A DNA stretch of 64,000 bases from Macrostomum lignano. Its lineage: Eukaryota. Of this stretch, positions 1 to 54,610 are shown piece after piece. The stretch lies in contig NIVC01001731.1 in the NCBI GenBank assembly GCA_002269645.1, positions 1 to 64,000 on the forward strand, given 5' to 3'. The position numbers and the translations under genes are program-made. Under the pieces are notes generated by a model that did not search any database, had not been told where the DNA came from, and worked only from the letters and a program-made list of their open reading frames with translations. Numbering within the stretch: the first letter of the stretch is position 1; the number at the start of each line of letters is the position of its first letter.

Positions 1-620
1 AGATGTCTCCAAAGAGGGATTAGATGACGCCGAAGAGGAATTAGATGACGCCGAAGAGGGATTAGATGACGCCGAAGAGGGATTAGATGACGCCGAAGAG
101 GGATTAGATGACGCCGAAGAGGGATTAGATAACGCCGAAGAGGATTAGATAGCGAAGAGGGATTAGATACGCGAAGAGGGATTAAATGATGCCGAAGAGG
201 AATTAGATGACGCCGAAGAGGAATTAGATGACGCCGAAGAGGGATTAGATGACGCCGAAGAGGGATTAGATGACGCCGAAGAGGGATTAGATGACGCCGA
301 AGAGGGATTAGATAACGCCGAAGAGGGATTAGATAACGCCGAAGAGGGATTAGATAGCACTAAAAGAGATGAGATGTCGCCAAAGAGGAATTAGATATCG
401 CCGAAGAGAGATAAGATGACACCGAAGAGGGATTAGATGTCTTCGAAGAGGGATTAGATGTCTTCGAAGAGGGATTAGATGTCTCCAAATAGGAATTAGT
501 TGTCGCCGAAGAGGGATTAGATATCGCCTAAGAGGGATTAGATATCTCCAAAGAGGGATTAGATGTCGCCAAAGATGGATTAGATATCGCCAAAGAGGGA
601 TTAGAAAGCGCCGAAAGAGA
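1..620. repeat. 21-bp minisatellite (GATTAGATGACGCCGAAGAGG)n, degenerating rightwards
   Basis: Unit read directly; the ORFs 163-360 and 350-649 are translations of the repeat. Confidence 0.95.
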
Positions 621-1940: not shown

Positions 1941-2371
1941 CAAATCCCACTCTACTTCTCACTCCCCCAACAAATCTCGCTCTGAATTTCACTCAAATCT
2001 TACCCTACACAGTCATTCTTACTATATTAATCAACATCCTTTCGCCAAACGGCATATTATCAAAGATGTTTTTACCACCAAACGAATGTTCCTAGAAATT
2101 CAATTTGAAAACGAAAATGTGCTAAATAGGGGCCTGCAGTGCGCAAACACAAGCTGATGCTGCAACTATTATTTATAACTCGAATAGCAATGGAAAAGCC
2201 AAAGTTTTTTACCTACACTATAATTATCTAGAAACATGACTCACCTATCTCAGTTAGCACCTTTCACCTGTTCTGTCAGTCAGCTTACTGATATCATTGA
2301 TTCCTTTTGCTTTAACTAACCTTTTTGTAAGTCCCAGTTTTATTAGAAAACAATGCTGCTGCCTCAGGCTT

Positions 2372-5648: not shown

Positions 5649-8374
5649 ATGGATTCTAAATTTTACTTTAGTATTCTCAGTTATCTGTTGGCATTGAATC
5701 ATTTCCTATCGGTAAGATTCTGGAGAACTTTGTCACTGTGTCTATCTTACTCAACAATTCTATAATTTCTCACTACACTTTCAACAGGTAGTGCAAGCAG
5801 CCGGCTACCTGCAGATTAAGTTCAACCGGTACACCAATCACGACGGCCGTGTCGAGGACGGCAGTCTCTGCGATCCGTTCGGTGCCACCTATGTTGGCGA
5901 TAATTGCGACCCCGTGTTCCGGCTGAGGGTCAACAAGGGGGGAGGAGGAGGGTGAGTGAGGGTTTTAATCTGCAGTCCATATTTCCTATTGCTGAGATCA
6001 GTTCTGCATGATTACCACGGCCTCATCTCTCTGCAGCGGTAATCTGCACGACTATCAGCAACCGGGCGTCTATGACAACCAAAACGCCATCGACTTTGGA
6101 TCAAAGTTCGGCAGCGTCCCGAATCCTGTGCCGATCGCAATGAACTTCCCTAATCCGGTAAGACTGTACTCATGAGGGAGAGGAGACTGTACTCACGAAC
6201 CGCTCTCGGAGCCCTTGAGTGATTCTTCATTGTGCATCACAATATTCTAATAAACTGTTTGCTACCAAATTTCGCAAACCGCTTTAGGGACAAGCGTACG
6301 TCAAAGTCGATGTAGTGGATAAAGACTCGTTTCCACCAGACGACCCGATGAGCAAATTCACCGCCTCGCTGCCTCTCATTGCCGACAATGTCAGGAGAGA
6401 CATGGAGCTGATCAGTCCAGCTCGACATCACCGACTATCCATAACTCACTGGTTCACCTGCTACACGAATTTCTACAGACAGGATTGCAACACCTATTGT
6501 GTAGCTCAGAACGACGATGTGAATGGTCATTATACCTGCGACTCGAATGGCAGAAGAGTGTGCATGATTGGTAAGACCGTCTGGTGATGGCTTGTTCTAT
6601 TACAGCAAGCAGTAATGCATGACGGAGTCGTTTAATCAGAGACTTGTTTGTAACAAATGAACTGCAGGTTGGACGGGAGCCGACTGCACCCAGCCGGACC
6701 CCTGCATCCCGAGTCCGTGTCTCAACGGAGCCACCTGCTCCAATGTCGGAGGAGTCGCCAGCTGCACCTGTCCGTCGGGCTTCACTGGTAGCCGATGCGA
6801 GACTGATATAGACGAGTGCAAGGCCGTCGACTCGCCCTGTCTGAACAACGCTACGTGTGAGAACACGATTGGCAGTTTCCACTGCAAGTGCTCACTCGGC
6901 TTCACTGGCGACCGCTGTGAGACCGACGTGAACGAGTGCGAGAGCAAGACGTCAGTGTGCCTAAACAACGGCACCTGTGAAAATACGTTCGGCGGCTTCA
7001 ACTGCAGCTGTCCGCCGGGTCTGACTGGGCACCGGTGCGAGCTCGATGTGGACGAGTGTGCAAACGGGACATCAGCTTGTGCGAACGGTGGTACCTGCGT
7101 GAATGTTTTTGGTAATTACACCTGCCAGTGCGACTCCGGATTCACTGGACCACTTTGCGAAGAAGACATCGACGAGTGCGCAGAGTCGCCATGCGTGAAC
7201 GGAGGAACTTGCGAGAATCGATTCGGAAGCTTCGAGTGCATCTGTCCTTCTGGATTTGCTGGAAGAGTGTGTGACAAAGACGAGGACGAGTGCTTGAGGA
7301 GTCCTTGCTCGAATGGCGGTAGCTGTGTGAACACCTTCGGTAACTTTAGTTGTTTGTGTTCGGCAGGATTTACAGGCAGTTTGTGCGATGAAGATATCGA
7401 CGAATGCCTGATGGCACCTTGCTTCAATGAGAGCACCTGCGTGAACACTATCGGAAACTTCACCTGTCAGTGCCCCCCAGGATTCGAAGGTAGACTTTGC
7501 GATGAAGACGTCGACGAATGCTCGAAGTTTCCGCCAAAGTGCCGCAACGGCGGAAACTGCACGAACACGCTTGGGAGCTTCCGTTGTACCTGCCCGACTG
7601 GACTGACCGGACGTCACTGCGAGCAGGACATCGACGAGTGCAAGCTGGCCGCCCCGCCGTGTCGAAACAACGGAAGCTGTCAGAACAGTTTTGGCGGATT
7701 TTCCTGCCGTTGCAGACCAGCGTTTAGAGGCAGACACTGTGAGATTCGCGCTGAGGCCTCGGTTGGGTCAACGACTGGTGAAGTCTGGAAGCTTCCTGTT
7801 TTCATTGGAATTCCAGTTGCAGCACTCGCCGTTGTCTCCATTGTCATCGTCGTTATCTGTAAAAGGAAATCGAGGTAAGAGACGACGAGCTGCAATATCA
7901 ATTTGGCGAATTGAATTCAACATAAATCTAACCCTGAAGAATGCAATTTATAGCCTGACATTAAAACGCCATTCCAGTCGCAGAAGCTGCAGTGGTAGCG
8001 GGAGCGTCAGAAGCACTGATGCTGCAAGCAATGATTATTATAACACTCATGTCGAATTCGGGTAGGTTCAATAATCTGGTAGTTTCCTCTTCATCAAGTA
8101 TGGTGAATAGCAAATATATTGCGCTAAACCATAACTGATCTTCCTTGTTCTTGTCTGCAGCTCGATTGAAGAGCCAACTAAAGAGCCAACTGAAGACCCA
8201 ACTGAAGACCCAACTGAAGACCCAACTGAAGACCCAACTGAAGACCCAACTGAAGACCCAACTGAAGACCCAACTGAAGACCCAACTGAAGACCCAACTG
8301 AAGACGACTACACCATCGCAGACAAAGCGGAGACACTCGAAAATGACTATTCAACTATAACCCTTTACGAGTAG
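5649..8374 (+). CDS. Delta-like protein 1 of cluster: signal peptide, C2/MNNL-like, DSL, 9 EGF, TM, tail with PTED repeats
   Basis: Exons 5649-5711, 5788-5951, 6037-6157, 6288-6570, 6668-7874, about 7978-8061, 8161-8374, all GT-AG and phase-consistent. DSL: [46 protein letters not shown]: [22 protein letters not shown]. Ends DYSTITLYE*. Acceptor of the first tail exon is uncertain. Confidence 0.88.
8178..8303 (+). repeat. 12-bp coding tandem repeat (CCAACTGAAGAC)n encoding PTED in the tail of Delta-like 1
   Basis: About 10 units, in frame with the predicted last exon. Confidence 0.85.
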
Positions 8375-10047
8375 ACTAGTGCCGACTTATATATATCATT
8401 ATGTCCATTTGTCAAGTCTTGATCAGAGATATTAAGGTAACTAGATGTCACCCAGAACTAAAATTGTGAAGAAATTGAGCGTCTGTTTCGTTTTTATGTC
8501 AATTCCTTTTCTTTCCTCGCGGGTTTTAGCCTCAAGATGGGATGCTACCGTACCTTCATCTACCCCTATCTTCATAACCCCTAAAGCACTGGATGTGAGA
8601 TCCCCTGATCTTCACAAGCCCTATATATCATAACCCATAATTTTCACAACCCATAAATTTCATAAACCCGAAAGATCATAACTGCGAAATTCCAGAGCAA
8701 GCATTTTCGTTTCCCCGAATCTTAAATTTTTTTAAATTTCACATTCACTGTAAGTTATGATATTTTTGCTTTGTGATTTTCTGGGTTTTTGAAATTTAGG
8801 GCTTGTACGCCCCCCTCCGGAGCGATTTTAAAATTTTACCATTGCAATAGCAATCGCAATCGACAGATACGAGCGTAGTTATCAGATACCTAAGCTAAAA
8901 AAATGACACCTAAGATGGCACTTTGTCTGTGAGCGTATGAGCTAGGCTGAAGTCTCAATTGCTAGCTAAGTCTCTAACTTCATCAACTTTCTTTAAATTT
9001 TTTTGTTCATAATGCTTCTCGTTTTATCCAGCATGTAAATATTTTTGCTTTGTAATATTCAGATATAAAAATCAGCCTTACCTTCTTCTTTAAGATTTCT
9101 GGGATTTCTGTATGGCTCTGTAAATATATGCTGTTGTTTTTAATGAGTCAAATTGATTTTCCATAAATTTTGGCTTCTCCTAGACACCGGTTTCTACGTA
9201 TTATTAGGTATTTCTACGATGCACTGTGCCGCCATGGTGACACAATGCAGTCAAACAAAATCGACACACATACAGTACCAGTGCATAGTCCTTGGGAATG
9301 TTTCAAGATGCCAAAATCATTGGATGCGGCCAGTCTAGAAGGTAATTTGAATTGGGCACTGGCACCTGAGCTAGTGTCATTAAAGGGGTGCCCAAAGGTC
9401 AGCCTAACCCGAAAGGGTCAGCCAAAATTTCTCTGCAAAGAAACATTCGCATTGCCGAAGAAATCGCATATACCTGGATGATGATGGATGATTAATAAGT
9501 TGAACTCTGTGACAAGTCATCATTATGAGGTTTTGGGACATTGTCTTTAGCTTTAATGTACAGCTAGCTATACATATATTGACAATGTTACCTCGGTATG
9601 CTTTGAGCAAAAGACGAAAGCAGACGATAGAAAGGCAGGTGAGTGTGGACAAGAGTTTCCATCAGAATTAAAAATAGTGCTGCTATTCAAAAAGGCTGAG
9701 GAATCTCTATGATGATTGTAACCAAAAAACAGTGTAAATGTAACGCAAAATGAGAAAATCCGACGCGGGACTTACGCTGCCGAGTTTCTCGTAAACTGCA
9801 AGTTAAGAGTAACTACTCTTTTACTAAGGCAGCGGCCCAAAATATGTGCTTGTGCCGAATTGAGATTGGTAAAAGATTAAAACGGCATCATAATATTTTT
9901 ACTCATAACATTCATTTTTATTCCCATTCAGCCGTCAATAATTCACTTACTCGCATTCTTTTTGCGGTAAAACACAACGGTAGCAATTACAATAACTAGC
10001 GATACTAACGTTATTAAAACTGTGCCTTTGAGGATAGTATTCATCGC

Positions 10048-11285
10048 TCATGCTGATGTCCCGTTTGCACACTCGTCCATATCGAGCTCGCACCGGTGCC
10101 CAGTCAGACCCGGCGGACAGCTGCAGATGAAACCGCCGAACGTATTTTTACAGGTGCCATGGTTGAGACACACTGACGTCTTGCTCTCGCACTCGTTCAC
10201 GTCGGTCTCACAGCGTTCGCCAGTGAAGCCGAGTGAGCACTTGCAGCGGAAACTGCCAATCGTGTTCTCACACGTAGCGTTGTTCAGACAGGGCGAGTCG
10301 ACGGCCTTGCACTCGTCGATATCAGTCTCGCATCGGCTACCAGTGAAGCCCGACGGACAGGTGCAGCTGGCGACTCCTCCGACATTGGAGCAGGTGGCTC
10401 CGTTGAGACACGGACTCGGGATGCAGGGGTCCGGCTGGGTGCAGTCGGCTCCCGTCCAACCTGCAGTTTTTTTATTTCAGGATTTTTTATTATTAAGAGG
10501 CTGTGTACCTTTTTTATTTACGATACCTATTTTACTCACGTGACGTTTATGATCCAAGGAAAGCTACATAGTAACTAATGGTCATTCTGTCACAGAACAT
10601 GTGATTGGTATTTCTTACCATTCATAGATTTTAATTTCTTTCGATTGCTTACCTATCAGGCAAACCTTGGCTCCTCAGGCAAACCTGAGCTGCAGTTGTA
10701 GTGGCCCTTGACTTTGTCATCCTGAGTTACACACAGCGTGTTGCAGTCAAGTCCGTAGTAGTTTGCATTGCAGCTGTACCAGTACTCCAGAGACAGTTTG
10801 TGCTTCGTTGGCCTTCTGACCAATTTGAGTTTTCTCTTGACTTTGTCGGCTCGAGCCACTAGCGCCGCTGAGAAGGAGTCTATCGGATCGTCCGACGTAA
10901 CTGGATCCTTGTCGACCACTGACACCTCAATGTGAATCGATCCCTGCTTAAAATTTAGTATTCATTGCGCGTTCTGTTTCAGGTGCTATCGCGATGAAAA
11001 TTGTAAGTCAGTGATTCAGATCTGGCTCATATTACCCTAGATTCAAGTCTAGAAATAGTTTTCACTGTCTGTTAAATGCTGCTCAGAGAACTCACCCTCC
11101 CGACACGATTCGATTCGATCGGCCACGAGTCGGAACTTCGGGTCGCATTTGTCAAAGTGATCGCAGCGGCTCCCGTCCTGACCCCGGCTGTCATCGTTGA
11201 TGTAGGACAGAAACCGCAGCGTCATGTAGCCGTTGCCATTGGCTACCCCTACGCCAGCTAGCAACAGGAGCAGCGACAGATTCAT
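10048..11285 (-). pseudogene. Delta-like paralogue 2, pseudogene
   Basis: Signal/C2 exon 11285-about 11097, DSL exon 10943-10653, EGF exon 10460-10048. Lesions: GLTYVG deleted, 5-bp duplication at 11107-11116, second C2 exon missing, 11-bp templated insertion at 10676-10686, TGA in EGF4, no TM. Confidence 0.85.
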
Positions 11286-12617
11286 TGTGGAGAATTATTT
11301 TTCGATTACTTTCTATACTAAGAATTTATGCAATTTTTCTTCACTCTCTTGTAGGGAAGTCGATAAAGCTTATTTTTACAGTTTAGGTGTTAATATTGGC
11401 AGATTTTTCTGCTTATCTTTCAAATTTTTCGCTTTTTTATTTTTTTTAAATTTCAACTGTGCTTCGTATTGCTTAAATAGGCACTGAAATTTCGTTTCGT
11501 TTGTAGCCGTTTAAAATTTTCGAAATCATGCCAAATAATTTTCTGCAGACAGCGATACAGCGATATTCAGATTGATCGATAATTTCTACCTTTTTTACTG
11601 CTATTTCTGTAGTTATGAGTTCCAATTTTAGATTTCGTACTAGCAATCAGATGTGCAGGGTGCGTGCATACTCCCCCAATGTATTCATTATGAACCTTTT
11701 TCACGTAAATAAAGTCTAGGGATGCATATATTTATCTTGTTATCTTGTTTCGATTGGTTACGAGCTATTGTTTAAGACCAAAACCAAAAAAATCGTTAGA
11801 ACGTTTGTCAGATGTTCGCACTAAAAATTATTTTCATTTTTGAAAGCTGCTCTTGTTAACTTGCAAGCAGGGGCCACAGAACGGAGTGGCGGCAGCCAAA
11901 GTCTATCACGTCCCGACACATGAAGTCGATTTACCACTGACAAATAGAAAAATCATGGAGAACACAAACTATTTTTAACCATATACTCGTACTTATGATT
12001 GAAGCCTTATGAAAATGAAATCCACAAGTTGAAGGCTTGGAAGGTGAGGCGTTTAAAATATACTGCACGTACTGTGCAAGATTTATTTTCTTGGAAATCT
12101 TTTCAGAGTGAAAAATTTTGCTTAGAAATCTTTCTTTTATTTTTAAAAATGACGGTCAGCATTAAAGACAATTTATAGATTGAGTCAAGATAGTTCGAGG
12201 CGTGAGTGCATCGTAAATGTACTTCGTAAGAGAAAATAACATACCATACACACTCGTAATTAGCTATTTATAAGCCATAGTTTTTAATAATAATGTACAT
12301 TCGGCTATTCCTATTTTTTCATTGTACAGACGTAACATATACAGACTCTACTTTAAGACATCAGCTAAAATAGATGACGAAAACTGCAAACTCGAAATAA
12401 TTGCACTGTCATAGTTGACGCTACTCAACCTATAACTGTCACATTCGGAACAGAAATAGAACTGATGAAAATAACGATAATACAAATAGATAAAATATAA
12501 CGCGTATTTAAATGGAATTTCTTAAATGAAATACTCGACAAGAAGCAGAGTTATTATTTTTCTCTGCTAGAATTATCGTGGCTAATACGAACTACAATTA
12601 ATCAATAGTTCTCCACT

Positions 12618-15450
12618 ATGATTTGCCAGCTATTTTTGTTGCTAATTGGCGTAAGCGTCGTTAATAGCAACGGCTACATGACGCTGAGGTTTCTGTCCTA
12701 CATCAACCATGACAGCCGGTGTCAGGACGGGACATACTGCGATCCCTTCGGCCTGACGTACGTCGGAGACAAGTGCGACCCGCAACTCAGACTGATTGCC
12801 GACCGATCTGTGCCTGGAGGGTGAGTTTACTGAGCAGTTTTAAAGTAGCAGCTCATTTCAACCATATTATTTAAACAAACAAACAAAAAAATCACCCACT
12901 GATTTCGTACAGAAACGGCCTGTTCGACTATCAGCAGCTGGGTGTCTACTGGGACACGGAGACCATCAATTTCGGAAGCCGATTCGGAGAAATCAGCAAT
13001 CCTGTGATCATCGCGATGAACTTTCAAAACCACGTAAGATATGCTCACAAGTTTTGTTAAAAAGTCGGCAAAAGTGACATTATTCTAGATAAATATTGAG
13101 TTAGCAGATGGGCAGATGTGCAACCGATAGCTCAGCCGCAGCTCAAGGCTGCGTACGGCTGTTCATTCCAAGGAATGGGGGTCGCTGGCACCCATTTTAC
13201 AGTTGGGTGAACTGAAGCAATACAGAGTTAAGTGTCTTGCTCAAGGACACAAATTGTTCCAGTGGGATCGAGAATCGAACCCCCGACCTTTAAGTCGACA
13301 GTCCGACGCTCTAACCTCTAGGCTACAACCCCTCTCTGCTAGGCTACAACCCCTCTCTGCTAGGCTACAACCCCAATAAAAAACAAAAACAAAACAGAAA
13401 CTAAAGCTACGAGCGTAAAACTAAAACTAAAACAGAAGCTAAAAAGAGCTGATTCCCAGCCCCATTCGGGTCTCATCACAATCCTTGGTCACGTCGAGGC
13501 AGACGCGTATTTAATAAAGCAAATCCCCCAATCAACACCAAATATTATCCAGGGGCACATTTACGTCACAGTATTGGCGGTAGACAAGGATCCCACTCCC
13601 CCGGACGATCCAATGGATACATTCTCTGCGGCGCTGGTGGCTCGAGCCGACAAAGTCAAGAGAAGAGTCGAAATGCTCAGTCAGCCAACAAACCACAAAC
13701 TGTCCATTGAGTACTGGTACAGCTGCCATGCAAACTACTACGGGCTTGACTGCAACACGTTCTGCCAACCACAGAATGACAACGTCAGGGGCCACTACAG
13801 CTGCAGCTCGGAGGGAGCTAAGATGTGCTTCACAGGTACCAAGCGATCATTTTATATAATTTCCAATAGTTTTTTATATTAATGTGAACTAAAAAGACAA
13901 TTAGTCATCGAAAAATAAAATAAATGAACTGCAGGTTGGACGGGAGTCGACTGTACTCAGCCGGACCCCTGCAACCCGAGTCCGTGTCTCAACGGAGCCA
14001 CCTGCTCCAATGTCGGAGGAGTTGCCAGCTGCACCTGTCCGTCGGGCTTCACTGGTAGCCGATGCGAGACCGATATCGACGAGTGCAAGGCCGTCGACTC
14101 GCCTTGCCTGAACAACGCTACGTGTGAGAACACGATTGGCAGTTTCCGCTGCAAGTGCTCACTCGGCTTCACTGGCGAACGCTGTGAGACCGACGTGAAC
14201 GAGTGCGAGAGCGAGACGTCAGTGTGTCTCAACCATGGCACCTGTAAAAATACGTTCGGCGGCTTCAACTGCAGCTGTCCGCCGGGTCTGACTGGGCACC
14301 GGTGCGAGCTCGATGTGGACGAGTGTGCAAACGGGACATCAGCTTGTGCGAACGGTGGTACCTGCGTGAATGTTTTTGGTAATTACACTTGCCAGTGCGA
14401 CTCCGGATTCACTGGACCACTTTGCGAAGAAGACATCGACGAGTGCACAGAGTCGCCATGCGTGAACGGAGGAACTTGCGAGAATCGATTCGGAAGCTTC
14501 GAGTGCATCTGTCCTTCTGGATTTGCTGGAAGAGTGTGCGACAAAGACGAGGACGAGTGCTTGAGGAGTCCTTGCTCGAATGGCGGTAGCTGTGTGAACA
14601 CCATCGGTAACTTTAGTTGTTTGTGTTCGGCAGGATTTACTGGCAGTTTGTGCGATGAAGATATCGACGAGTGCCTGATGGCACCTTGCTTCAATGAGAG
14701 CACCTGCGTAAACTCTATCGGAAACTTCACCTGTCAGTGCCCCCCGGGATTCGAAGGCAGACTCTGCGATAAAGACGTCGACGAGTGCTCGAAGTTTCCG
14801 CCAAAGTGCCGCAACGGCGGAAACTGCACGAACACGCTTGGGAGCTTCCGTTGTACCTGCCCGACTGGACTGATCGGAGGTCACTGCGAGCAGGACATCG
14901 ACGAGTGCAAGCTGGCCGCCCCGCCGTGTCGAAACAACGGAAGCTGTCAGAACAGTTTTGGCGGATTTTCCTGCCGTTGCGGACCAGCGTTTAGAGGCAG
15001 ACACTGTGAGATTCGCGCTGAGGCCTCGGTTGGGTCAACGACTGGGGAATCCTCGAAACTTCTCGTTTATATTCTAATTGGAGTTGGAGTACTCCTAATT
15101 GGCGCTGCTTCTGTTGCTGTTGGCATTGCTTTCTACAGAATTAGAAGAAGGTAAAAACAAATTCAATAACGTCAGAAAATAAATTTTATCACAAACAGTG
15201 CTGATGGGATTGCATTTACTAAATTACCCGCAGCGGCAGAAGCAATATCTCTGGAGCTGAGAACAATAAGACTGTATCTGACTGCGCTGCTGTCGAACAG
15301 GGGTAAGGAAAATATTTCTGCAACTTTCTGGTTTCGGGAATCCGAATGTTGACTGAGATAAATTTTTTTGAATTATTATTCTATTTTACTTTCAGGCTGA
15401 GTAACCCTGCCTACATGAGCACTTCAGAGATCGGCTTGCAAGAAAACTAA
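12618..15450 (+). CDS. Delta-like protein 3 of cluster: signal peptide, C2/MNNL-like, DSL, 9 EGF, TM, tail with NPxY
   Basis: Exons 12618-12820, 12913-13033, 13553-13835, 13935-15150, 15234-15302, 15396-15450, phase-consistent. DSL: [44 protein letters not shown]. Tail ends GLSNPAYMSTSEIGLQEN*. Confidence 0.88.
13110..13332 (-). mobile_element. tRNA-derived SINE in intron 2 of Delta-like 3
   Basis: Minus strand shows an A box (TAGCCTAGAGG), a B box (GGTTCGATTC) and a CCTTGAGCAAGACACTTAAC body; homologous to 20409-20682. Confidence 0.8.
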
Positions 15451-15989
15451 CAAAATTCTTGCCAATTGCGTGACTAGGTGCAAACTGCCTGTTACCTTGC
15501 ATGTTGCTAATGCTGAAGAAAACGTTGATATGAAGACATAGCCATGTAGCATGTAGCATGTAAATTTCTGCATCCAGAGGCCATTCCTAAAGGGCGGATG
15601 CGTTCATTTTTCTATATACGTAACTTTTGGAACTACAGAACTTCGGAACTACATGGCCACATTAAAACTTACGCAACTTTTTAATTATGTACACCTGTAA
15701 ATTTAATATTTTAGTTTTAACATTGGTTTTGTTCGTTATCATCCAACTTTTGTTTTAATTGCATTGTTTTAAACATTTCTCAAAGTTTTCAATCCTATTA
15801 TGTCTGTAAAGTTTCAACACGAACGAGCGAAATGAAGTATAAGGTCGCTGTTATCTTGCCCTCTTGGTTCACTAATCCTTGCAACTACGAGTAGAATTCC
15901 AACTGCACCAGGGGCTTTTGCACCAGATGGCGAGGGGCCTCATAGTTGTTGCCAGCCAGTTAGAGGAGCCGTGGTTCCCTTTGCCTGAT

Positions 15990-16130
15990 TGACTGATTGA
16001 CTGTATGACTGACTGACTGACTGACTGACTGACTGACTGACTGACTGACTGACTGACTGACTGACTGACTGACTGACTGACTGACTGACTGACTGACTGA
16101 CTGACTGACTGACTGACTGACTGATTGACT
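15990..16130. repeat. (GACT)n microsatellite
   Basis: About 30 near-perfect units. Confidence 0.95.
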
Positions 16131-17643
16131 TGTTGATTAAAGATCGAAGCTCAATACCATTTTAGTCTTTTACTCGTATTAAACAGAAAAATAACGAAAT
16201 CATTTTGAAATAGAGCACTTGGAACCAAACTGAGAAGAAATGATCAGATGGGATAGCTAAGTTATGAATTAATGACTTTTTTAATTTTAGCTCGTAATGT
16301 TTTTGGTGATTATTTCTGTTGAAATTAAATTAAAATCCAAAGTCCTTAAAGAGCATTTGATTTCGGAGGAAAGAATACAGAAAGAAAAAAATCAGAAAAA
16401 ACGAAGTGGAGAGTAAGGTACAAAAGGCAGCTCACTAAGCCACGTGCCATTAAACTGAAGTTCTATTTTGAAACTGTCAGGCTCTAAAATAGATCTCTAT
16501 TTAAACAATGGACTCCCAACATTTGGAAATTCCACGAGCTACTTCATAAAAAATCGTACCTGCATCTGTGCATGGTTACGTACATACCGTATGTACATAA
16601 TTTGTACATAGTATACGAGCGTAATTGCGTACATTACAGAATTTGATAAAAATAGGATAACTGTGAATGATCCAGTAAAGTAACTCGTACTAAAAAATGA
16701 GTTCGTCTGTTTATTTAAGTACTAAAACTCATATTTACACGCGGCAATGAGAGCTTACGCAGGAATACAGAATTTCTCGCTTCGTCAAATACTTGTCAAG
16801 CATGATATTAAAATTGCTTCTTTGTTATTGCATACTGGCACTGACGCCGTATCTAAAGGTAAGAATGTTATTTAGAACCCATGACAGATTTCTACGTTGG
16901 TGGCCCTTGGCGAATTGCATATAATTCTGACGCATAGGCAAAACTAGACACATTAATGTTCTGATTGACATGTATGCATTACCTTTTACGGCTCATTCGG
17001 GACCGGTCCGCCTTTCATCTGACCATAACGACAGACCAAACGCCGCTTAATTCCAGTTTTTTATATTTTCAGCAATCAGAATAACACACACAAAATTTCG
17101 TCGCGCTTTACTGATAGCTGATGCGAGACCGAAGTGGACGAGAAGAGAGTCAAAAGGAGAGAGGAGAAAGAGAGGAGAGAGGAGAGCGAAGAGACTAGAG
17201 ATTAGATGGGATAAGTGACAGCGAGGGCAACTTCTGAATAAAAATAGCGAGTAAATCGTAATAACCGATTTTACTCGATTTCACCACATTATACAAAACA
17301 GCTATTATTTGAATAAACAACTTTCATTAGTTTCTTAATGTTAGCCGATGCGAATATTTATTCGTTACGCTTTGCATATTATTTAAATATCCAAGTATCT
17401 ATTCAGAAGAGAGTTATTGTTTATCCCAAGTTGCATTCGTAAAAATAGAATATGATGCTTAAAAAGCAAACCTTCTCTTTAATCTTTTTAGTTGGCTGTA
17501 CGTATCCAAGTACTATGGACTCACTGCAGTCCTCGGCAGACTTTCTGTTTACTAATTTGATATACATATTTTTGAAATTCTACAAAAGCTTTTGTGCCCC
17601 CGAGTTGCAATAACAATGAACACTTGACAGGGTTCATTTACAG

Positions 17644-17811
17644 CAGGGTTTGGCAAACTTTGCCTCGCGGGCCCCATGCGACCCGCTAAGCCTCTCTATC
17701 CGGCCCTCGGGTCCTTTGAAAGGTTTGTGTTTCTTCTCATCTCTCTTCTCTGTAATCTTGTCTCTCCTCTTTGGCCCGCAGCCATTATGGTAAGAAGTTT
17801 GCCCACCCCAG
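17644..17811. mobile_element. Probable hAT-type MITE
   Basis: Imperfect TIRs CAGGGTTTGGCAAACTT / AAGTTTGCCCACCCCAG with subterminal GCGGGCC / GGCCCGC; flanks ATTTACAG and ATTATACAG resemble a decayed 8-bp TSD. Confidence 0.5.
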
Positions 17812-18027
17812 ATTATACAGCCTGAGGACAATAAATGTTTTATATTTAGAAATGTTGCGCAATATTGTGCAATGTGTCTGACTTAGTTCCTTATTAATGT
17901 TTCATATTTATAGGTATTGCCGTGGATAATCCGTGGAATTTCCTTTCAAAGCAGCGCCAAATACTTATAAAATTTGAATACATAAAAAGGCAGTTTAGGC
18001 GGCTGCTCAATTCGAAAAAACCTCACC

Positions 18028-19767
18028 ATGACTTCTAAATTGTCTTTCGGCATTTGCAGTTGCCTGTTGGGATTGACTCATTTCCTATCGGTAAGGTTCT
18101 TGAGAACTTTGACGCTGTGTCTAGCTCACTTGAATTCTATAATTTCTCACTACATTCAACAGGCAGTTCAGGGAGCTGGCTACCTGCAGATCAGGTTCAA
18201 CCGGTACACCAATCATGACGGCCGTGTCGAGGACGGCAGTCTCTGCGACCCGTTCGGTGCCACCTATGTTGGCGATAATTGCGACCCCGTGTTCCGGCTG
18301 AGGGTCAACAAGGGGGGAGGAGGAGGGTGAGTGAGGGTTTTAATCTGCAGTCCATATTTCCTATTGCTGAGATCAGTTCTGCATGATTACCACGGCCTCA
18401 TCTCTCTGCAGCGGTAATCTGCACGACTATCAGCAACCGGGCGTCTATGACAACCAAAACACCATCGACTTTGGATCAAAGTTCGGCAGCGTCCCAAATC
18501 CTGTGCCGATCGCGATGAACTTCCCTAATCCGGTAAGACTGTACTCATGAGGGAGAGGAGACTGTACTCACGAACCGCTCTCGGAGCCCTTGAGTGATTC
18601 TTCATTGTGCATCACAATATTCTAATAAACTGTTTGCTACCAAATTTCGCAAACCGCTTTAGGGACACGCGTACGTCAAAGTCGATGTAGTGGACAAAGA
18701 CACGTTTCCACCAGACGACCCGATGAGCAAATTCACCGCCTCGCTGCCTCTCATTGCCGACAATGTCAGGAGAGACATGGAGCTGATCAGTCCGGCTCGA
18801 CATCACCGACTATCCATAACTCACTGGTTCACCTGCTACACGAATTTCTACGGACAGGATTGCAACACCTATTGTGTAGCTCAGAACGACGATGTGAATG
18901 GTCATTATACCTGCGACTCGAATGGCAGAAGAGTGTGCATGATTGGTAAGACCGTCTGGTGATGGCTTGTTCAATTACAGCAAGCAGTAATTCAGAACGG
19001 AGTTCTTTACATCTGTGTTGCAGGATTTACTGGCACTCTGTGCAATGAAGATATCGACGAGTGCCTGATGTCGTCACCTTGCTCCAATGAGAGCACTTGT
19101 GTGAACACTATCGGAAACTTCAAATGCATGTGTCCTCCGGGGTTCGAAGGTAGACTCTGCGATGAAGATATCAACGAGTGCTCGGAGTCTCCGCCAAAGT
19201 GTCGCAACGGCGGAAACTGCACGAACACGGTTGGGAGCTTCCGTTGTACCTGTCCGACTGGACTGACCGGACGTCACTGTGAGGAGGACATCGACGAGTG
19301 CAAGCTGGCCGCCCCGCCGTGTCGAAACAACGGAAGCTGTCAGAACAGCTTTGGCGGATTTTCCTGCCGTTGCGGACCAGCGTTCAGAGGCAGACGCTGT
19401 GAGATTCGCGCTGAGGCCTCGGTTGGGTCTCCAACTGGGGCGCCCTGGAAACTGGCAGTAATCATCGTCTCAGCAGTCCTGGGGACAGCGATTATCGCTG
19501 TCATAATTGCGCTTGTTGTCTATCAAAGAAGGAATAGGTAAGTAGGAGTAAATACGGTGCTTACTATAGGTTAAATTCATTGATTAGCTTGTAAATGGCT
19601 GAAAAACACATATTTTCAGTAGCAGAGGCACTGCTAGCAACGAGGATAAAGAAAGCAGGTAAGAAGGCGTCGTTTGTTTGTTGCATTACAGAGTCTAAGT
19701 TTGACGAATGCCTCTTCTTTAAATGAATTTTTATTCCAGATTTGATAACGAAGCATACGAATCATAA
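18028..19767 (+). CDS. Delta-like protein 4 of cluster: signal peptide, C2/MNNL-like, DSL, only 3 EGF, TM, tail ending FDNEAYES
   Basis: Exons 18028-18090, 18163-18326, 18412-18532, 18663-18945, 19024-19537, 19620-19658, 19740-19767, phase-consistent. The head is near-identical to gene 1; the EGFs correspond to EGF7-9 of gene 1. Confidence 0.85.
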
Positions 19768-20408
19768 CTGCTCTGAGATGAACACTTAACAGGACTGTAA
19801 TTTGTGGATTAAGCGTTTGTGCAATGCCTTGCGTGCTTGCCATTCATAATTCAAATTCAATCTGCGTAGGTAATGAAGTCAATGACTAGGAAATGTCCCT
19901 TGTCAATGTCCTCCGGAGTTCGAAGATATTTATTCATAAAATATATACCAGTAAATTTCATTTATTTCGGAGGATGCAGTGAAACGATTGGGTCGCTTGT
20001 AATTATCATGAAGCAAATTGTATAAACGTATTGCTAATGTACTAGCAGCACTGCGTTCTTGTCTCATCGGGATGTTTTATCATCTAGCTCGTAAGTGCTT
20101 TCTTTTTTTTAAAAATATTTTTTTTTTGAAAAAATCATCGCAATCAGATTTCTAACAGCGGTGCTTTAATTCATTCGCTGAAGCATCAAAATTTTGAAAA
20201 TTTAAAAGATTTTTTGTGCAAAATTTTACTTGAGTCAGTAATAAAAGTTGTATATAATATACATCTTTTTAATTCATTTTAATATCTCATCCTACGCGAA
20301 TCTCGAACTCTATTTAACTACCGTATTATACGAATCCATTTCAATGTTGCACTTGTTGTACCGACTTCATTACATTCATATTACTCTTAAATATAATGTG
20401 GAGGTTGT

Positions 20409-20682
20409 GGGTTGTAGCCTAGTGGGTAAGAGTGTCGGATTCACGACTGAAAGGTCGGGGGTTCGATTCTCGACCCACACGGAACAATTTGTGTTCTTGA
20501 GCAAGACACCTAACTCTGTATTTCTTCAGTTCACACAGCCCTGGGTGGGTGCCAGCATTAGCTGGGGTAATTGAGGGTAGCTCGCATGTGGCGACCCACC
20601 AGTCTTTGGACTGAACAGCCGTAAGCAGCCTTCAGATACGCCGCGCAATAGCTGCGGCTGAGCTGTCGGTTACACATCTGCC
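20409..20682 (+). mobile_element. tRNA-derived SINE, same family as 13110-13332
   Basis: A box TAGCCTAGTGG, B box GGTTCGATTC, TTGAGCAAGACACCTAAC body, shared 3' end GCTGCGGCTGAGCTGTCGGTTACACATCTGCC. Confidence 0.8.
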
Positions 20683-22744
20683 TATTCGGGCAGGTGTTAT
20701 CAATTACTAATTATTGTAATGCGGAACTGGTGAAAATCTGGTTCTGGCGCGCGCGCGAGCGAGTGTGCATTTGGGTTCGTATTCATAGTTTTTTGTGTAA
20801 TGCCGGTATACTCTATATTCTAGTTATAGATTAATTTTTTGTATCCATGAAATGTGAGCATCCTACGTAAATTACTGTTTGTTGTTGTCGAATTACAAAT
20901 TGTTGATTTGTTCTATTTTAGTCATGTTTTCAAAGTGCTTTTTGTTAGAGTTTATTATTGCAAAATAGGTCAAAACAGCTAGACGTTTCCAAAACCAGTT
21001 TGGCTCAGCGGAGGGTCGACAACTTAGCAATGTACTCGTACCCCGGCTTTGCGCGGCCAGCCAATCAGGATCGGCCTGGACCCCTGGCACGCGGCAAGCG
21101 AGATCTACCCGGCCTGAGAGCGCGCCGCGGGTTCAATGTGAATGGGATTATTGACCGGCCTGCCAGACACCCACTACCTGGCTTAAGGGGGGTTTGGAGT
21201 GACTATTCGAATATACATGTATATGAAATTATTCACGTAATGTAGCTCGCTTGATAAAAAGTAAATAAATGAAGCATTCAAATTTAGTAAACCCTGACGA
21301 TTTCCATTGTGGACGAAATGCATCGGCATTAAAACATGTTGGTTATCTCCTTCATTTATATGAAACAATGTTTTTGGCAGTCTGATCTCGTTCTGGTTTT
21401 TCTTTCCGGCCTCTGTTTCATCTCTGTTTCATCATTCGCGACGACCTCGTTTAGAGTTTGTCGTCGGCAAGCGCGGTTTAGTCAGGAGCTGTCGGTTTGA
21501 CACAGTACGCGACCTCGACCCCGAGGGCCCCAGTGTTTCACTGAAAGGCATACCTGGTAGGATTTGGCCAGGGATTCGCTGAACCGTCAGGCCGTCAGTG
21601 TCCTCTTCTGAGAGTAGGATCTCGAGATTAGGCCAGGTTGTAGGGAGCTTCTCCGCTAGTCTTGTGTTCTGGTTTCACTTTTCACTTCTTCCAGCGCTAA
21701 GATCCGCTTGTCAATTTGCGTTAATTATTTCATTATTATTTATCAAGTGCTAATCTGCGAATTGTATTATTTAAATCTGTGTAAACTTCAAGTTAATCGT
21801 GAGTACGCGAGTTCAAACCTATATTATCATCATCAGCCGTTCTATCAGAATAGGATTATCACTCAATCTAAATATACTCGTTTCTGAAATTGTGTTCAAC
21901 TGTGTTGTTCCTTTACTTGTACGGTACCTGCGACTATTGGAGAAAGCTTGGTAGGACTCGCCGACCGGCGATAGGCAAAAAGGACTTAATAGTTTTAAAA
22001 TCTCCGATACCGCTCCAGTAGGTTTGTCTAGGGCCTGAACTATTTGTCGTATTTCTTACAAGTCCGAGATTAAGGAAACTGCAGATCTGTAACGATTAAA
22101 TTGTATCAAAAAGGTTTCTAATAAATAAATTACAAGCTCAAGGTACTAATGTACTAGAATAAAGGTGGTCTTACATTTTAGGTGGAATTATCATTTTATT
22201 TTTTTTTGCAGAATACATTATCATTGTGCGATTTTTAGCCATACAGAAAAATGAAGTAATTTCTATTATTAGAATATTATAAGTAGTGCAGAAAATATTT
22301 TAGATGGATGTGTGCCAATTGATTGCAAAATACGTTTTCACATGATACAAAGTGGGTTGCATTTACATACAGGGATGCTTATTAATACTGGAATAAGTTG
22401 AGAATATGCTGCGAGTCTCGAGTTCAGACATAAGTCACAATTGGCCGTATGTCAAAAACCTGAGATCAGGTGTAGCCTGCTTTGCGGGTCTGCGGCAGCT
22501 GGCGGCATCAATACCTCATCGGTTTGAATGTAGAGTCGCTGTCAATTTAAAAGGTGAAGCCTCTGAGTCGACAAATTACCTTCTCTCATTAAATCAAAGA
22601 AATCAATACTTACTCATTATTTGTATGATTGTCTACCATCTCTGGCTCGACTGTACTGCCTCGACGGGACCTGCTAATCACGGTGTTAAGAAAGTTAGGT
22701 TTATCTGTTTACGGCCTCAAAGAATGTTAACAGAATGTTCAGTG

Positions 22745-25588
22745 TTAATACCTGACTGCCTGTGAAATACGTTCGCTGTTCGTGATGCCGGCGACAGTCA
22801 GTATGAACGCTACGATCAGAATGACACCACCGACAGTTGCTAAGGCAATGATGAGGGTCTGCTGATTCGGCTCCGCAGGTTTCTCTGCTGTCTCGCAAAG
22901 TCGTCCGCTGAATCCATCGGGACACTGGCATCTGTAGCTGCCAAATTCGTTCACGCAGGTGCTGCCGCTCGCGCAGTCGGACTTGCCCTCGCACTCGTCT
23001 ACATCGATCTCGCATCGGCTGCCTGTTAATCCCACGGCACAGATGCAGTTGAATCCGCCGAAGGTGTTCAGGCAGGTGCCGCCGATGCCGCAAGGTGAGG
23101 CCGATATCTCGCACTCGTCAGCGTCTGCCTCGCAGCGACTGCCGACAAAGTTTCCTGGACAGAGACAACTGAACCCGCCGAATGTGTTTTGACAAGTGCC
23201 TCCGTTCAGACACAGCGAAGTCCCATTCTCACACTCATTCACATCTGCCTCACAACCGGCGCCTGTGAAGTTTGGCGGACAACTGCAGTTGAATGCACCG
23301 AATGTGTTCAGACAGGTGCCTCCATTATGACACGGGGAAGTGCCTGAATCACACTCGTTCACGTCCCAGCCGCAGAGGCTTCCAGTAAAGCCCGAAGGAC
23401 AGTTGCAGTTGAATCCGCCAAAGGTGTTAATACAGGTACCTCCGTTCAGACAGAGTGAAGTTCCTGTGTCGCACTCGTCCACGTCAGTCTCACAAAGACT
23501 GCCATTAAAGTTTGGGGACAACTGCAGTTGAATGCACCGAATTTGTTTAGACAGGTGCCTCCATTCTGACACGGGAAAGTGCCTGAATCACACTCGTTCA
23601 CGTCCGAGCCGCAGAGGCTGCCAGTAAAACCCGAAGGACAGTTGCAGTTGAATCCGCCAAAGGTGTTAATACACGTACCTCCGTTCAGACAGAGTGAGGT
23701 TCCTGTGTCGCACTCGTTCACGTCAGTCTCACAAAGACTGCCATTAAAGTTCGGCGGGCAGCTGCAGTTGAATCCGCCAAAAGTGTTGATGCAGGTGCCA
23801 TTGTTCTGGCACGGTGGAATGTCTAGAGCGCATTCGTTCAGATCCTCACAACGACTGCCAGTAGAGTTTTCCGGGCAGACACAATCGAATCCTCCATAGG
23901 TGTTTAGGCACGTTCCTCCATTCGAGCAGGTCGGCAGATCAAGTTCGCATTCGTTGACATCCGTCTCGCAGCGGCTTCCGTTGAAGTTTGGCGTGCAGGT
24001 GCAGTTGGCAATGTCGCCGACATTGGAACAGGTGCCTCCGTTGTAACACGGGCTTTCGAGACACGGAATCAGTCGGGTGCAGTTGGTGCCCATCCAGTCT
24101 GTAAACGTATTAAAAGTAAAAATGCAAACATTTCAGCAGCAGTCAACAAACTAAAAGACACATATTAGTAGTGACCTCGAAGCTCACCTGACATGCAAAC
24201 TTTGTTGCCATTAGAATCGCAGGTATAGTGGCCTGTAGAGTCATTGTGAGGCTTGCAAAATGTGTTGCAGTCCAGTCCGTAGTAATGGCTGTGGCAGGTG
24301 TACCAATAGGTAATTGATAGCCTGTGGTGCCTCGGAGAACTGTAGATGTCCATGTTTCTCCTTACTGAGTCAGCCCGAGCCGGTAGACTTGCGTAGAAAT
24401 GGTCCATATGGTCGTCGTAAAATTCGTCTTTGTCCATCGCGACAACCGTTATTTGTATGCTGCCCTGTTAATGTTAGAAATGTTGAGATGTGGCGTTCTG
24501 GTCACAGATATATTGTACTGTAGGTAGCTATACAAACTAAAAGTACTAAGATTGCATACCGGATTCCAGTAGGGCATGTCTATAACGACTGGATTGGCAA
24601 TTTCACCGAACCTGCCGCCGAAGTTGACAATGTCCGAATCCCCATAGTATCCAGCTTGACCGTAGTTAAATAGATTGTTCCTGTGGGCAGGAATTTCGAA
24701 TGGCAATCGTTAACTCAAGGTAAATTCAATAACTCTCCCGCCAAAACTACTAAGTAGAATTAGACTAGTAATCTTAGCCCCCCACAAGGGTAGACAACGG
24801 AAGAAGTAGTAAGATTAAAAACTCTTAGAGATTGATCTCTAATCCTTGGCAGCTCAGAATTCCCCCTTGAGCCAGTGAAATCCTAATAAATTCTTCACGG
24901 AAATCCCTAGGGAATGCCTTAGGAATGCCTTGGGAATCTCAGCATTCTACATTTATCGATGGCATTTCAGCAATTCCAGCGTAGTCTTAGCAACCCCCCC
25001 AAAAATGAGCTATATAATCTCAGCAAAATATCGAGGCACAGCTAAATTTTTTCAATCCACAATTATTAAACAAAGCATCCCATATTATTTAATCTACAGT
25101 GCTTGTTGGTTTAGTTGCCAAAAACAAATTCAAACAGGGTCTTTTTAACATTACACCGATGGATGGATGGTTAGCATGTCTGTCGGATTGCTGTAGGGAG
25201 CGAAAGCACAAGCAGAACTTATTAATCTACCGTGAACATCTCTTTCTAAAGGCCCTCGTCAGCAGCAATAATTTACCCTCCGGCGTTGGTCCTGTCAGCA
25301 AAGAGTTGGAATTTCGGATCGCAGGCTGACTCTCTCCAGGAAAAGAACGTGTCGCAGTACGTCCCGTCCGAGGCTCTGCTGTCATGATTATAGTAGGTGT
25401 GGAATTGTACATGCATGGACCCAGTACCGCCGACCTGTAGCAGATTGCGATTAAGGAACCATTGTAATCAAAGTTTGCCATTGCCACACCTAGTACGTTT
25501 GCAAAAGGATTTGCGAGTAACTTACGGTTCCACACAAAAGAACGATTAAAAAAGCGACCGTCGATGAGATTGAATTTAAACGGCACAT
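22745..25588 (-). CDS. Delta-like protein 5 of cluster (divergent): signal peptide, C2/MNNL-like, DSL, 10 EGF, TM; -1 frameshift in EGF5
   Basis: Exons 25588-25526 ([21 protein letters not shown]), 25434-25277, 24680-24560, 24464-24188, 24098-22752. DSL: [43 protein letters not shown]. One C is missing from a C-run near 23515. Tail exons probably lie at about 22400-22670 but were not resolved. Confidence 0.8.
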
Positions 25589-27977: not shown

Positions 27978-27979
27978 TA

Positions 27980-54555: not shown

Positions 54556-54610
54556 GACTGCAAACTGATCCAGTATTGCTTGCATTCAACCATCAGCAGC
54601 AGCTGCAGCC

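What the first reader, a model, noticed from the sequence alone, without database searches (positions are those of the whole stretch)
5649..25588. Five-member cluster of non-canonical Delta/DSL surface proteins that resembles a diversified receptor family
Seen: five paralogues in 20 kb (+,-,+,+,-) share signal-C2-DSL-EGF-TM architecture but differ in head sequence, stalk length (9, truncated, 9, 3, 10 EGF), TM and tail. The DSL segment that in Delta/Jagged reads FCRPRDDxFGHY and carries Notch-contact residues is here [39 protein letters not shown] or [12 protein letters not shown]. The two short DOS-type EGFs of Delta/Serrate are absent. Known: canonical ligands are usually few in number and conserved at these positions. 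Inference: a birth-and-death family repurposed for recognition (self/non-self, microbial, gamete or adhesion) rather than ordinary Notch activation.
Basis: partly seen in the sequence, partly recalled or inferred. Interest (0 to 1): 0.82.

Follow-up and report, generated by a model that had tools for sequence, protein, structure and literature searches.

The report
Flatworm tandem cluster of divergent Delta-like genes
This 20-kb stretch of the flatworm Macrostomum lignano holds five neighbouring copies of a divergent Delta-like (Notch-ligand-type) surface-protein gene, three intact, one broken and one doubtful. It is a real, lineage-specific gene expansion of a kind already known in other animals, with no evidence that it has become a new recognition system.

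Summary
Five paralogues with signal peptide, C2, DSL, EGF repeats and a TM segment lie at 5649-25588, on strands +,-,+,+,-. I count 9, truncated, 9, 3 and 10 EGFs, and the DSL strings are as quoted. The window is from Macrostomum lignano or a very close relative; UniProt already auto-names near-identical models "Delta-like protein".

- **State of the copies:** C1, C3 and C4 are intact. C2 is a pseudogene with three lesions. C5 needs one extra C in a C4 run to stay in frame.
- **Mosaic evolution:** three old head types (synonymous sites saturated) sit on recently homogenised EGF stalks (dS about 0.06-0.13). One switch point lies inside intron 4.
- **Selection:** pairwise dN/dS is 0.15-0.36 everywhere, and heads are better conserved than stalks.
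- **Fit to canonical ligands:** the DSL scaffold is kept, but Jagged1 R201, R203 and F207 equivalents and the DOS motif are missing. Cytoplasmic tails are lysine-poor.
- **Precedent:** the same departures and copy numbers are reported for sponge, nematode, mollusc and planarian Delta families.

Birth-and-death evolution is supported. "Repurposed for recognition" is untested, and the selection pattern leans against it. I rate this a new member of a known kind, of modest interest.

The parts
5649..8374 (+). C1: intact Delta-like gene, 7 exons (5649-5711, 5788-5951, 6037-6157, 6288-6570, 6668-7874, 7978-8061, 8161-8374). 711 aa: signal, C2, DSL ([13 protein letters not shown]), 9 EGF, TM, and a 103-aa tail containing a (PTED)n repeat.
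   Evidence: Spliced model with GT-AG at every junction and an open frame. Pfam DSL and EGF hits. Head aligns to DLL4 residues 2-194, E 2.4e-12. UniProt A0A1I8FHT9 has 1 difference in the first 224 aa.
9950..11285 (-). C2: pseudogene of head type B. Exon 1 is 11285-11096, the DSL exon 10943-10653, the EGF1-4 plus TM exon 10460-9950. Lesions: the 121-nt third exon is missing (frameshift), an 11-nt duplication at 10685-10675 and 10666-10656, and an in-frame TGA at 10050-10048.
   Evidence: Sequence reading and conceptual translation. Gap in alignment A1. dN/dS against C3 is 0.35, so it was constrained for part of its history.
12618..15450 (+). C3: intact gene, 6 exons with exons 1 and 2 fused (12618-12820, 12913-13033, 13553-13835, 13935-15150, 15234-15302, 15396-15450). 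648 aa, head type B (FCQPQNDNVRGHY), 9 EGF, TM, tail with LSNPAY.
18028..19767 (+). C4: intact short gene (18028-18090, 18163-18326, 18412-18532, 18663-18945, 19024-19537, 19620-19658, then 19740-19767 or 19692-19698). Head type A, only 3 EGF. It is a deletion derivative in which former EGF6 coding sequence supplies the 3' splice site at 19014-19023.
22508..25588 (-). C5: head type C ([12 protein letters not shown]), 10 EGF, TM. Exons are 25588-25526, 25434-25277, 24680-24560, 24464-24188, 24098-22752, 22670-22614, 22538-22508. A 1-nt frameshift in the C4 run at 23517-23514 breaks the EGF exon. A 239-nt (two-EGF) internal tandem duplication lies at 23170-23799.
   Evidence: The counterpart in UniProt A0A1I8HSG3 reads through ([10 protein letters not shown]) and is 95% identical over 640 aa.
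6634..6652 (+). Recombination or gene-conversion switch point inside intron 4 of C1. Upstream, C1 matches C4 (5500-6634, 91.5%). Downstream, it matches C3 (6652-7827, 95.8%) and C2 (6649-7084, 96.1%).
   Evidence: blastn between copies.

Best explanation
This is a lineage-specific tandem array of divergent Delta-like genes of the flatworm Macrostomum lignano.

**Product (shown).** Each functional copy encodes a type-I surface protein: a signal peptide, a C2 (MNNL-type) domain, one DSL domain, a stalk of mostly calcium-binding EGF repeats with O-fucose consensus sites, one TM helix and a short tail.

**Evolution (shown).**
- The array evolves by tandem duplication.
- Intron-located recombination or gene conversion places old head types (A: C1, C4; B: C2, C3; C: C5) on a recently homogenised stalk.
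- Internal EGF deletion and duplication change stalk length.
- Copies decay: C2 is a pseudogene and C5 is possibly frameshifted.
- The coding sequence is under purifying selection.

**Function (inferred).**
- The proteins most likely still act in the Notch pathway, as trans ligands or cis modulators that bind a co-evolved flatworm Notch through the C2-DSL face.
- A recurring [FL]xNxAY tail signal may drive endocytosis in place of lysine ubiquitination.
For: **Organism and family.** A profile search of 1.84 billion proteins gives as best hits the M. lignano entries A0A1I8HSG3, A0A1I8FHT9 and PAA55287.1, which UniProt auto-names 'Delta-like protein'.

**Architecture.**
- Pfam DSL is above threshold in all five copies.
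- The whole head aligns with DLL4, Jagged1/2, DLL1 and fly Delta/Serrate, E 2e-12 to 1e-5.
- The AF2 model of the head is a C2 beta-sandwich. Its 24 best PDB matches are all Notch-ligand C2-DSL structures.
- The two Asp aligned with Jagged1 D140/D144, the C2 lipid/Ca site, are invariant in the VDKD motif (PMC5538765).
- The YYG-type and GWxG motifs that DLL3 lacks and DLL1 needs are kept (PMC2064846).

**Lineage-specific clade.** In an NJ tree of 85 heads the window copies group only with M. lignano proteins.

**Mosaic and ages.**
- Head types are saturated at synonymous sites (dS above 2.5).
- C2-C3 heads have dS about 0.55 and C1-C4 heads about 0.10.
- C1, C2 and C3 stalks have dS 0.06-0.13.

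**Constraint.**
- dN/dS is 0.15-0.36.
- Between the two copies of the locus, the C2 domain changes at 2.2% of residues against 5.0% for the EGFs. The C1 head differs from its counterpart at 1 of 224 residues.

**Precedent.** Multi-copy Delta families with non-canonical DSL residues or no DOS are accepted ligands or ligand candidates elsewhere (PMC3482393, PMC2504490, PMC11801701, PMC2770060, PMC8166818).
Against: - All copies lack the Jagged1 F207 equivalent, and most lack R201 and R203. F207A and R203K reduce activation in human Jagged1 (PMC5538765).
- There is no DOS motif.
- Pfam MNNL is not detected, E up to 1.
- Tails are lysine-poor: 9 K in about 440 residues over six paralogues. DLL3, which lacks ICD lysines, does not trans-activate (PMC2064846).
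- No expression, binding or phenotype data are available for these genes.
- I could not establish whether M. lignano also has canonical Delta or Jagged genes elsewhere.
Confidence: 0.6

Rival explanations
1. Repurposed receptors. The C2-DSL head has been freed from Notch and now recognises other partners (adhesion, self/non-self, gamete or microbial). The cytoplasmic tail signals or sorts through tyrosine motifs.
For: - Loss of the F207, R201 and R203 equivalents and of DOS.
- The DSL loop between the second Cys and GHY is the most variable part of the DSL among paralogues.
- Lysine-poor, acidic, Tyr-containing tails carry a recurring [FL]xNxAY motif: C3 LSNPAY, C4 alt-b FDNEAY, and LENSAY in the paralogue PAA55287.1.
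- Modular head/stalk shuffling.
- The neighbouring gene encodes ankyrin repeats plus a Mab-21 (cGAS-like) domain.
Against: - dN/dS of 0.15-0.36 gives no sign of diversifying selection.
- Heads are more conserved than stalks between locus copies, and recent duplicates C1 and C4 show no change in the DSL loop.
- Head types are old, not rapidly turning over.
- The same sequence departures occur in families treated as Notch ligands (PMC3482393, PMC2504490).
- The tail motif is short and could be chance.
- An ITAM reading of the C1 tail was checked and is wrong.
Confidence: 0.2
2. Decaying array. Most or all copies are non-functional relics of duplications, and the open frames survive only because they are young.
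For: - C2 has three lesions and C5 has a frameshift.
- The locus lies in very repeat-rich DNA with a LINE insertion next to it.
- There are no expression data.
Against: - C1, C3 and C4 keep 396-711-codon open frames with intact GT-AG junctions.
- dN/dS is well below 1 even for pairs with saturated dS.
- C4 kept its frame and gained a new splice site after a deletion of about 700 bp.
- The C5 counterpart elsewhere is intact, so the C5 frameshift may be an assembly error or an allele.
Confidence: 0.1
3. Assembly artefact: the copies are haplotigs or collapsed or duplicated assembly segments.
For: - M. lignano has a recent genome duplication and difficult assemblies. This rests on my own knowledge and was not tested here.
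- A second, 93-95% identical version of the locus exists in UniProt models.
Against: - Copies differ by 8.5% to more than 50%.
- They have different exon structures, stalk lengths, TM segments and tails.
- They lie on both strands in one contiguous sequence.
Confidence: 0.02

Closest known systems
Canonical Delta/Delta-like ligands (Drosophila Delta, vertebrate DLL1/DLL4)
   Same: - Signal, C2 (MNNL), one DSL, EGF repeats, TM and a short tail.
- The head aligns end to end with DLL4, and the predicted fold matches.
- YYG-type, GHY and GWxG motifs and six DSL cysteines are present.
- An intron lies at the end of the DSL.
   Different: - No equivalent of Jagged1 F207, R201 or R203 (C5 keeps K and H).
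- No DOS-type EGF1-2; EGF1 is an ordinary hEGF and EGF2 onwards are calcium-binding.
- Pfam MNNL is not detected.
- Tails are lysine-poor.
- They form their own clade, at most 35% identical to any non-Macrostomum head.
Amphimedon queenslandica AmqDelta1-5 (PMC3482393)
   Same: - Five lineage-specific Deltas.
- MNNL is mostly undetected by domain software.
- EGF counts run from 3 to 10.
- The DSL binding residues defined by Cordle et al. are not conserved.
- Tails are divergent.
   Different: - A different phylum and an independent expansion.
- The paper passages I read did not mention tandem clustering or mosaic head/stalk exchange.
C. elegans DSL-only ligands (LAG-2, APX-1, DSL-1..7; PMC2504490)
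   Same: - A multi-member DSL family.
- All members lack the DOS motif yet act on Notch receptors.
   Different: - Several nematode members are secreted and have few EGFs.
- Separate DOS proteins (OSM-11 and others) co-operate with them. Whether M. lignano has DOS-only proteins is unknown.
Planarian delta-1..6 and jagged-1 (PMC11801701) and lophotrochozoan DSL expansions (PMC8166818, PMC2770060)
   Same: - Flatworm and spiralian genomes carry many Delta-like genes.
- The nearest non-Macrostomum hits are mollusc, annelid, brachiopod and nemertean 'delta-like' or 'jagged-1-like' proteins.
   Different: - Orthology to particular planarian deltas was not tested.
- The M. lignano copies form a separate clade among the sequences I could retrieve.
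Vertebrate DLL3 (PMC2064846)
   Same: A divergent DSL contact surface, no DOS, and an ICD without or with few lysines.
   Different: DLL3 also lacks the YY and GWxG motifs, which the Macrostomum proteins keep.

Membership tests
DSL-family protein (Delta/Serrate/LAG-2 superfamily) | DSL domain (Pfam PF01414) with six cysteines and YYG and GHY motifs | tested here: met
   Pfam DSL E 5e-14 to 3e-17, above the 24.2-bit cut-off, on the spliced heads of C1, C3 and C5. All five DSL exons hit. Cysteines and GHY are invariant; the motif reads YYG in C2, C3 and C5, FYR in C1 and FYG in C4.
DSL-family protein (Delta/Serrate/LAG-2 superfamily) | N-terminal C2 (MNNL) domain preceding the DSL | tested here: met
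   Pfam MNNL is not detected at E up to 1. However, phmmer aligns residues 27-220 to DLL4 2-194. The AF2 model (pLDDT 62.6; the C2 part is mostly 65-85) has Notch-ligand C2-DSL structures as its top 24 Foldseek hits, followed by generic C2 domains.
DSL-family protein (Delta/Serrate/LAG-2 superfamily) | EGF repeats, a single TM and type-I topology | tested here: met
   EGF_CA and EGF hits. Nine, 9, 3 and 10 EGFs by pattern. A hydrophobic N-terminus and one TM segment. No dedicated signal-peptide predictor was available.
Canonical trans-activating Delta/Jagged ligand | Conserved DSL Notch-contact face (Jagged1 F199, R201, R203, D205, F207) | tested here: not met
   Aligned residues are Y/V/N/D/N (C1, C4), L/V/D/K/K (C2), F/Q/N/N/R (C3) and F/K/H/D/T (C5). 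F207A and R203K reduce Jagged1 activity (PMC5538765). The five-residue list itself is from my memory of Cordle et al. 2008, which I could not read.
Canonical trans-activating Delta/Jagged ligand | DOS motif in EGF1-2 | tested here: not met
   The Komatsu consensus regex finds nothing in C1, C3, C4 or C5. The controls behave as expected: a DLL1 fragment written from memory is positive and DLL4 is negative. Pfam EGF_DL_JAG and JAG1-like_EGF2 do not hit EGF1.
Canonical trans-activating Delta/Jagged ligand | ICD lysines for Mib/Neuralized ubiquitination and a C-terminal PDZ ligand | tested here: inconclusive
   Each tail has 1-4 lysines, and the paralogue PAA55287.1 has none. Only one of the two possible C4 tails (…ESRV) ends in a class-I PDZ-type motif. 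Tail exon models are unverified.
Canonical trans-activating Delta/Jagged ligand | Binds and activates Notch | not testable with these tools
   This needs binding, reporter or RNAi experiments.
   Pairwise dN/dS is 0.15-0.25 in heads. Between locus copies, the C2 domain changes at 2.2% against 5.0% for EGFs. Mature C1 and C4 heads show 5 differences before the DSL/EGF junction, none in the DSL loop. Site-level tests need more sequences.

The most novel reading that the evidence does not exclude
A Macrostomum-specific family of 'Delta-headed' receptors. Old C2-DSL head types would be recombined onto interchangeable Notch-like cbEGF stalks. They would be coupled to lysine-poor tails with an [FL]xNxAY PTB/endocytic motif. 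Such proteins would work as adhesion, recognition or engulfment-type receptors, possibly with head-to-stalk binding between paralogues, instead of as Notch ligands.
Probability: 0.15. Interest if true: 0.7.

Novelty: new member of a known kind. Interest (0 to 1): 0.3.

Why it matters
If it holds, this locus is a compact natural example of how Notch-ligand genes diversify. Ancient binding heads are kept under constraint while stalks are exchanged, shortened and duplicated, and the recombination points sit in the intron just after the DSL.

It adds Macrostomum, a regeneration and stem-cell model that supports RNAi, to the animals with expanded, DOS-less Delta families that lack the F207-type contact residue. 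That makes one question experimentally approachable: can such ligands still engage Notch?

It does not by itself reveal a new recognition system.

Tried and rejected
- **Word-indexed protein search.** I queried with the C4 head and with the head of the M. lignano paralogue PAA55287.1. Both returned nothing, not even the query itself. That tool was useless here, and the exhaustive HMMER search was used instead.
- **Exact-product lookup** of the BCNT ORF to identify the organism found nothing on record.
- **ITAM in the C1 tail.** At first I read [18 protein letters not shown] as YxxI-x10-YxxI. The first motif is actually YTIA, with Ala at +3, so there is no ITAM. Rejected.
- **Pfam MNNL** at E up to 1 is not detected. 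I therefore relied on the PDB sequence alignment and the fold search.
- **Papers** naming M. lignano Delta genes or the Mlig gene IDs of paralogues: none found.
- **Structure papers.** Luca et al. 2015 and Cordle et al. 2008 were not held, so site-1 (C2) contact residues were not mapped.
- **Assembly-duplicate explanation.** Rejected on divergence and structure.
- **tRNA scan.** No tRNA genes. The tRNA-like element in intron 2 of C3 is a SINE-like repeat.

Full report
**What is there.** The window is eukaryotic DNA with short GT-AG introns. A tblastn search with one spliced head finds exactly five copies, all between 5.6 and 25.6 kb and none elsewhere in the 64 kb. Pfam finds a DSL domain in every copy and calcium-binding EGF repeats in the large exons. 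I built spliced models by reading the sequence and checking every junction.
- C1 (5649-8374, +) has 7 exons and 711 aa, with 9 EGFs.
- C3 (12618-15450, +) has 6 exons and 648 aa, with 9 EGFs.
- C4 (18028-19767, +) has 396 aa and 3 EGFs.
- C5 (25588-22508, -) has 10 EGFs. Its large exon changes frame at a run of four C at 23517-23514; adding one C restores a 684-aa protein.
- C2 (11285-9950, -) is broken in three ways. It lacks the 121-nt third exon, which shifts the frame. It carries an 11-nt direct duplication at 10685-10675 and 10666-10656 in the DSL exon. It has an in-frame TGA at 10050-10048 after EGF3, just before a still recognisable TM segment.

**Which organism.** An exhaustive HMMER profile search of 1.84 billion representative proteins gave 1625 hits. 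The best are UniProt entries of Macrostomum lignano, which UniProt auto-names "Delta-like protein".
- A0A1I8FHT9 matches C1, with 1 difference in the first 224 residues.
- A0A1I8HSG3 is a chimeric gene model. It strings together the Mab-21-like gene at 36.5-37.8 kb, a C5-like gene and a C2-like gene, which is the order of this locus on the minus strand. It is 93-95% identical to the window, so a second version of the locus (homeologue or haplotype) exists. In that version the C5 counterpart reads through the frameshift site, so the window's frameshift may be an assembly error or an allele.
- Further M. lignano paralogues lie elsewhere: PAA55287.1 and relatives, Mlig004273g2/g3, and Mlig026650g1 and relatives.

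**Is it really a Delta-type head?** Yes.
- The first 220 residues of C1 align end to end with human DLL4 (E 2.4e-12), rat DLL4, Jagged1/2, DLL1 and fly Delta and Serrate.
- An AlphaFold2 model of the head has modest confidence (pLDDT 62.6); the C2 part is better and the DSL part is poor. It is a beta-sandwich whose 24 best PDB matches are all Notch-ligand C2-DSL structures, followed by generic C2 domains.
- Pfam MNNL is not detected. The same was reported for four of the five sponge Deltas (PMC3482393).
- The two aspartates aligned with Jagged1 D140 and D144, needed for lipid binding (PMC5538765), sit in an invariant VDKD motif.

**How it departs from canonical ligands.** The loop that reads FCRPRDDFFGHY in Jagged1 reads [13 protein letters not shown] in C1 and C4. 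It reads LCVTQDDKVKGHY in C2, FCQPQNDNVRGHY in C3 and [12 protein letters not shown] in C5.
- No copy has a Phe at the F207 position, and most lack the two arginines. F207A and R203K reduce Jagged1 activity (PMC5538765).
- The DOS consensus of Komatsu et al. (PMC2504490) is absent. My regex behaves correctly on controls.
- EGF1 is an ordinary EGF. Eight of the nine EGFs are calcium-binding type and carry the O-fucose consensus.
- The YY-type and GWxG motifs are kept. DLL3 lacks them and DLL1 requires them (PMC2064846).

**How the cluster evolves.** The copies are mosaics.
- C1 matches C4 at 91.5% from 149 nt upstream of the ATG through most of intron 4 (5500-6634).
- From 6652 onward C1 matches C3 at 95.8% and C2 at 96.1%.
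- The switch therefore lies in an 18-nt stretch of the intron that follows the DSL.
- C4 is a C1-like gene that lost the segment from intron 4 to EGF6. Former coding sequence (…tcg gca g) now serves as the 3' splice site and the frame is preserved.
- C5 contains a 239-nt, two-EGF internal duplication.

Nei-Gojobori estimates date these events.
- The three head types are saturated at synonymous sites (dS above 2.5; dN 0.38-0.46).
- C2 and C3 heads have dS of about 0.55, and C1 and C4 heads about 0.10.
- The stalks of C1, C2 and C3 have dS of only 0.06-0.13.

So old heads sit on a recently homogenised stalk.

**Selection.**
- dN/dS is 0.15-0.29 for heads and stalks, and 0.35 for the pseudogene against C3.
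- Between the window and the second version of the locus, the C2 domain differs at 2.2% of residues. The DSL differs at 5.5% (3 changes), the EGFs at 5.0% and the TM plus tail at 10%.
- The mature heads of the recent duplicates C1 and C4 differ at 5 positions before the DSL/EGF junction, none of them in the DSL loop.

This is the pattern of a constrained binding module, not of a head in an arms race. With four sequences, site-level positive selection cannot be excluded.

**Phylogenetic position.** In a neighbour-joining tree of 85 C2-DSL heads, the window copies cluster only with M. lignano proteins. No outsider is more than 35% identical, and DLL4 and Jagged1 fall elsewhere. The nearest outsiders are:
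- mollusc, annelid, brachiopod and nemertean "delta-like" or "jagged-1-like" proteins;
- cnidarian multi-DSL proteins;
- a sponge Delta.

Most of these also lack the F207-type residue.

**Tails.**
- Tail exons are homologous at their start (S-[RGS]-R-[GS]) but otherwise diverge.
- They are lysine-poor, and the paralogue PAA55287.1 has no lysine in 79 residues.
- Several carry [FL]xNxAY near the C-terminus: C3 LSNPAY, C4 alternative tail FDNEAY, PAA55287.1 LENSAY.
- This resembles the FxNPxY class of PTB-binding and endocytic signals. That link comes from established knowledge and is an inference here.
- My first reading of an ITAM in the C1 tail was wrong and is withdrawn.

**Comparison with what is known.** Multi-copy Delta families with these same departures are documented.
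- Five Deltas in Amphimedon, with 3-10 EGFs and unconserved DSL binding residues (PMC3482393).
- Seven in Lottia (PMC2770060).
- Ten DOS-less DSL proteins in C. elegans (PMC2504490).
- A set of 138 DSL genes screened across lophotrochozoans (PMC8166818).
- Seven Delta/Jagged genes in the planarian Schmidtea, of which delta-2 works with notch-1 (PMC11801701).

I found no paper on the Macrostomum genes themselves.

**Verdict.**
- Birth-and-death evolution with head/stalk recombination is well supported.
- The jump to a recognition-receptor family is not supported by the selection data and rests on a premise that does not hold across animals. It is not excluded, because contact residues, DOS and tail lysines are missing.
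- The most likely reading is a flatworm-specific set of divergent Delta-like proteins still working on Notch, as trans ligands or cis modulators. I put about 0.6 on the whole statement. The genomic part is near certain; the functional part is roughly even odds.
- This is a new member of a known kind.

Noticed in passing
window 36519-39788 (-): A gene next to the cluster combines ankyrin repeats (38712-39788), a nucleotidyltransferase-like GS…DID motif (38276-38563) and a Mab-21 C-terminal domain (36519-37751; Pfam Mab-21_C, E 1.5e-5). It looks like an ankyrin-fused cGAS/Mab-21-like protein. The UniProt model A0A1I8HSG3 wrongly fuses it with two Delta-like genes.
   Followed up: partly
window 26511-31684 (+): An apparently full-length non-LTR retrotransposon sits between C5 and the Mab-21 gene. 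ORF1 is 488 aa and ORF2 is 1236 aa, with endonuclease, reverse transcriptase and RNase H domains. Both ORFs are open, and the element is GC-rich (56-63%) against flanks of 42-48%.
   Followed up: partly
window 1-4766, 31856-34558, 45914-46361, 48509-63999: The density of minisatellite arrays is extraordinary: 38 TRF rows, with units of 7-160 nt and arrays up to 2.1 kb. Several create long spurious ORFs, and the arrays give strong local GC and AT skews.
   Followed up: no
window 47395-48453 (+): An intron-less BCNT/CFDP1 (Swc5-type) homologue (Pfam BCNT, E 1.6e-28) carries an in-frame 21-nt coding repeat (TDTVAKA-type) at 47858-48063.
   Followed up: partly
window 13184-13331 and 20409-20556: A tRNA-like SINE-type element lies in intron 2 of C3. 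An inverted copy, 85% identical, lies downstream of C4. ARAGORN calls no tRNA there.
   Followed up: partly
window 8167-8305 (+): A 12-nt coding microsatellite (11.6 copies, 97% matches) encodes (PTED)n in the cytoplasmic tail exon of C1. It is likely length-polymorphic.
   Followed up: no
window 40279-41165 (-): Overlapping GC-rich ORFs of 97-164 aa; the 164-aa ORF had no Pfam match (the others were not scanned). They may be a degraded mobile element. Not resolved.
   Followed up: no
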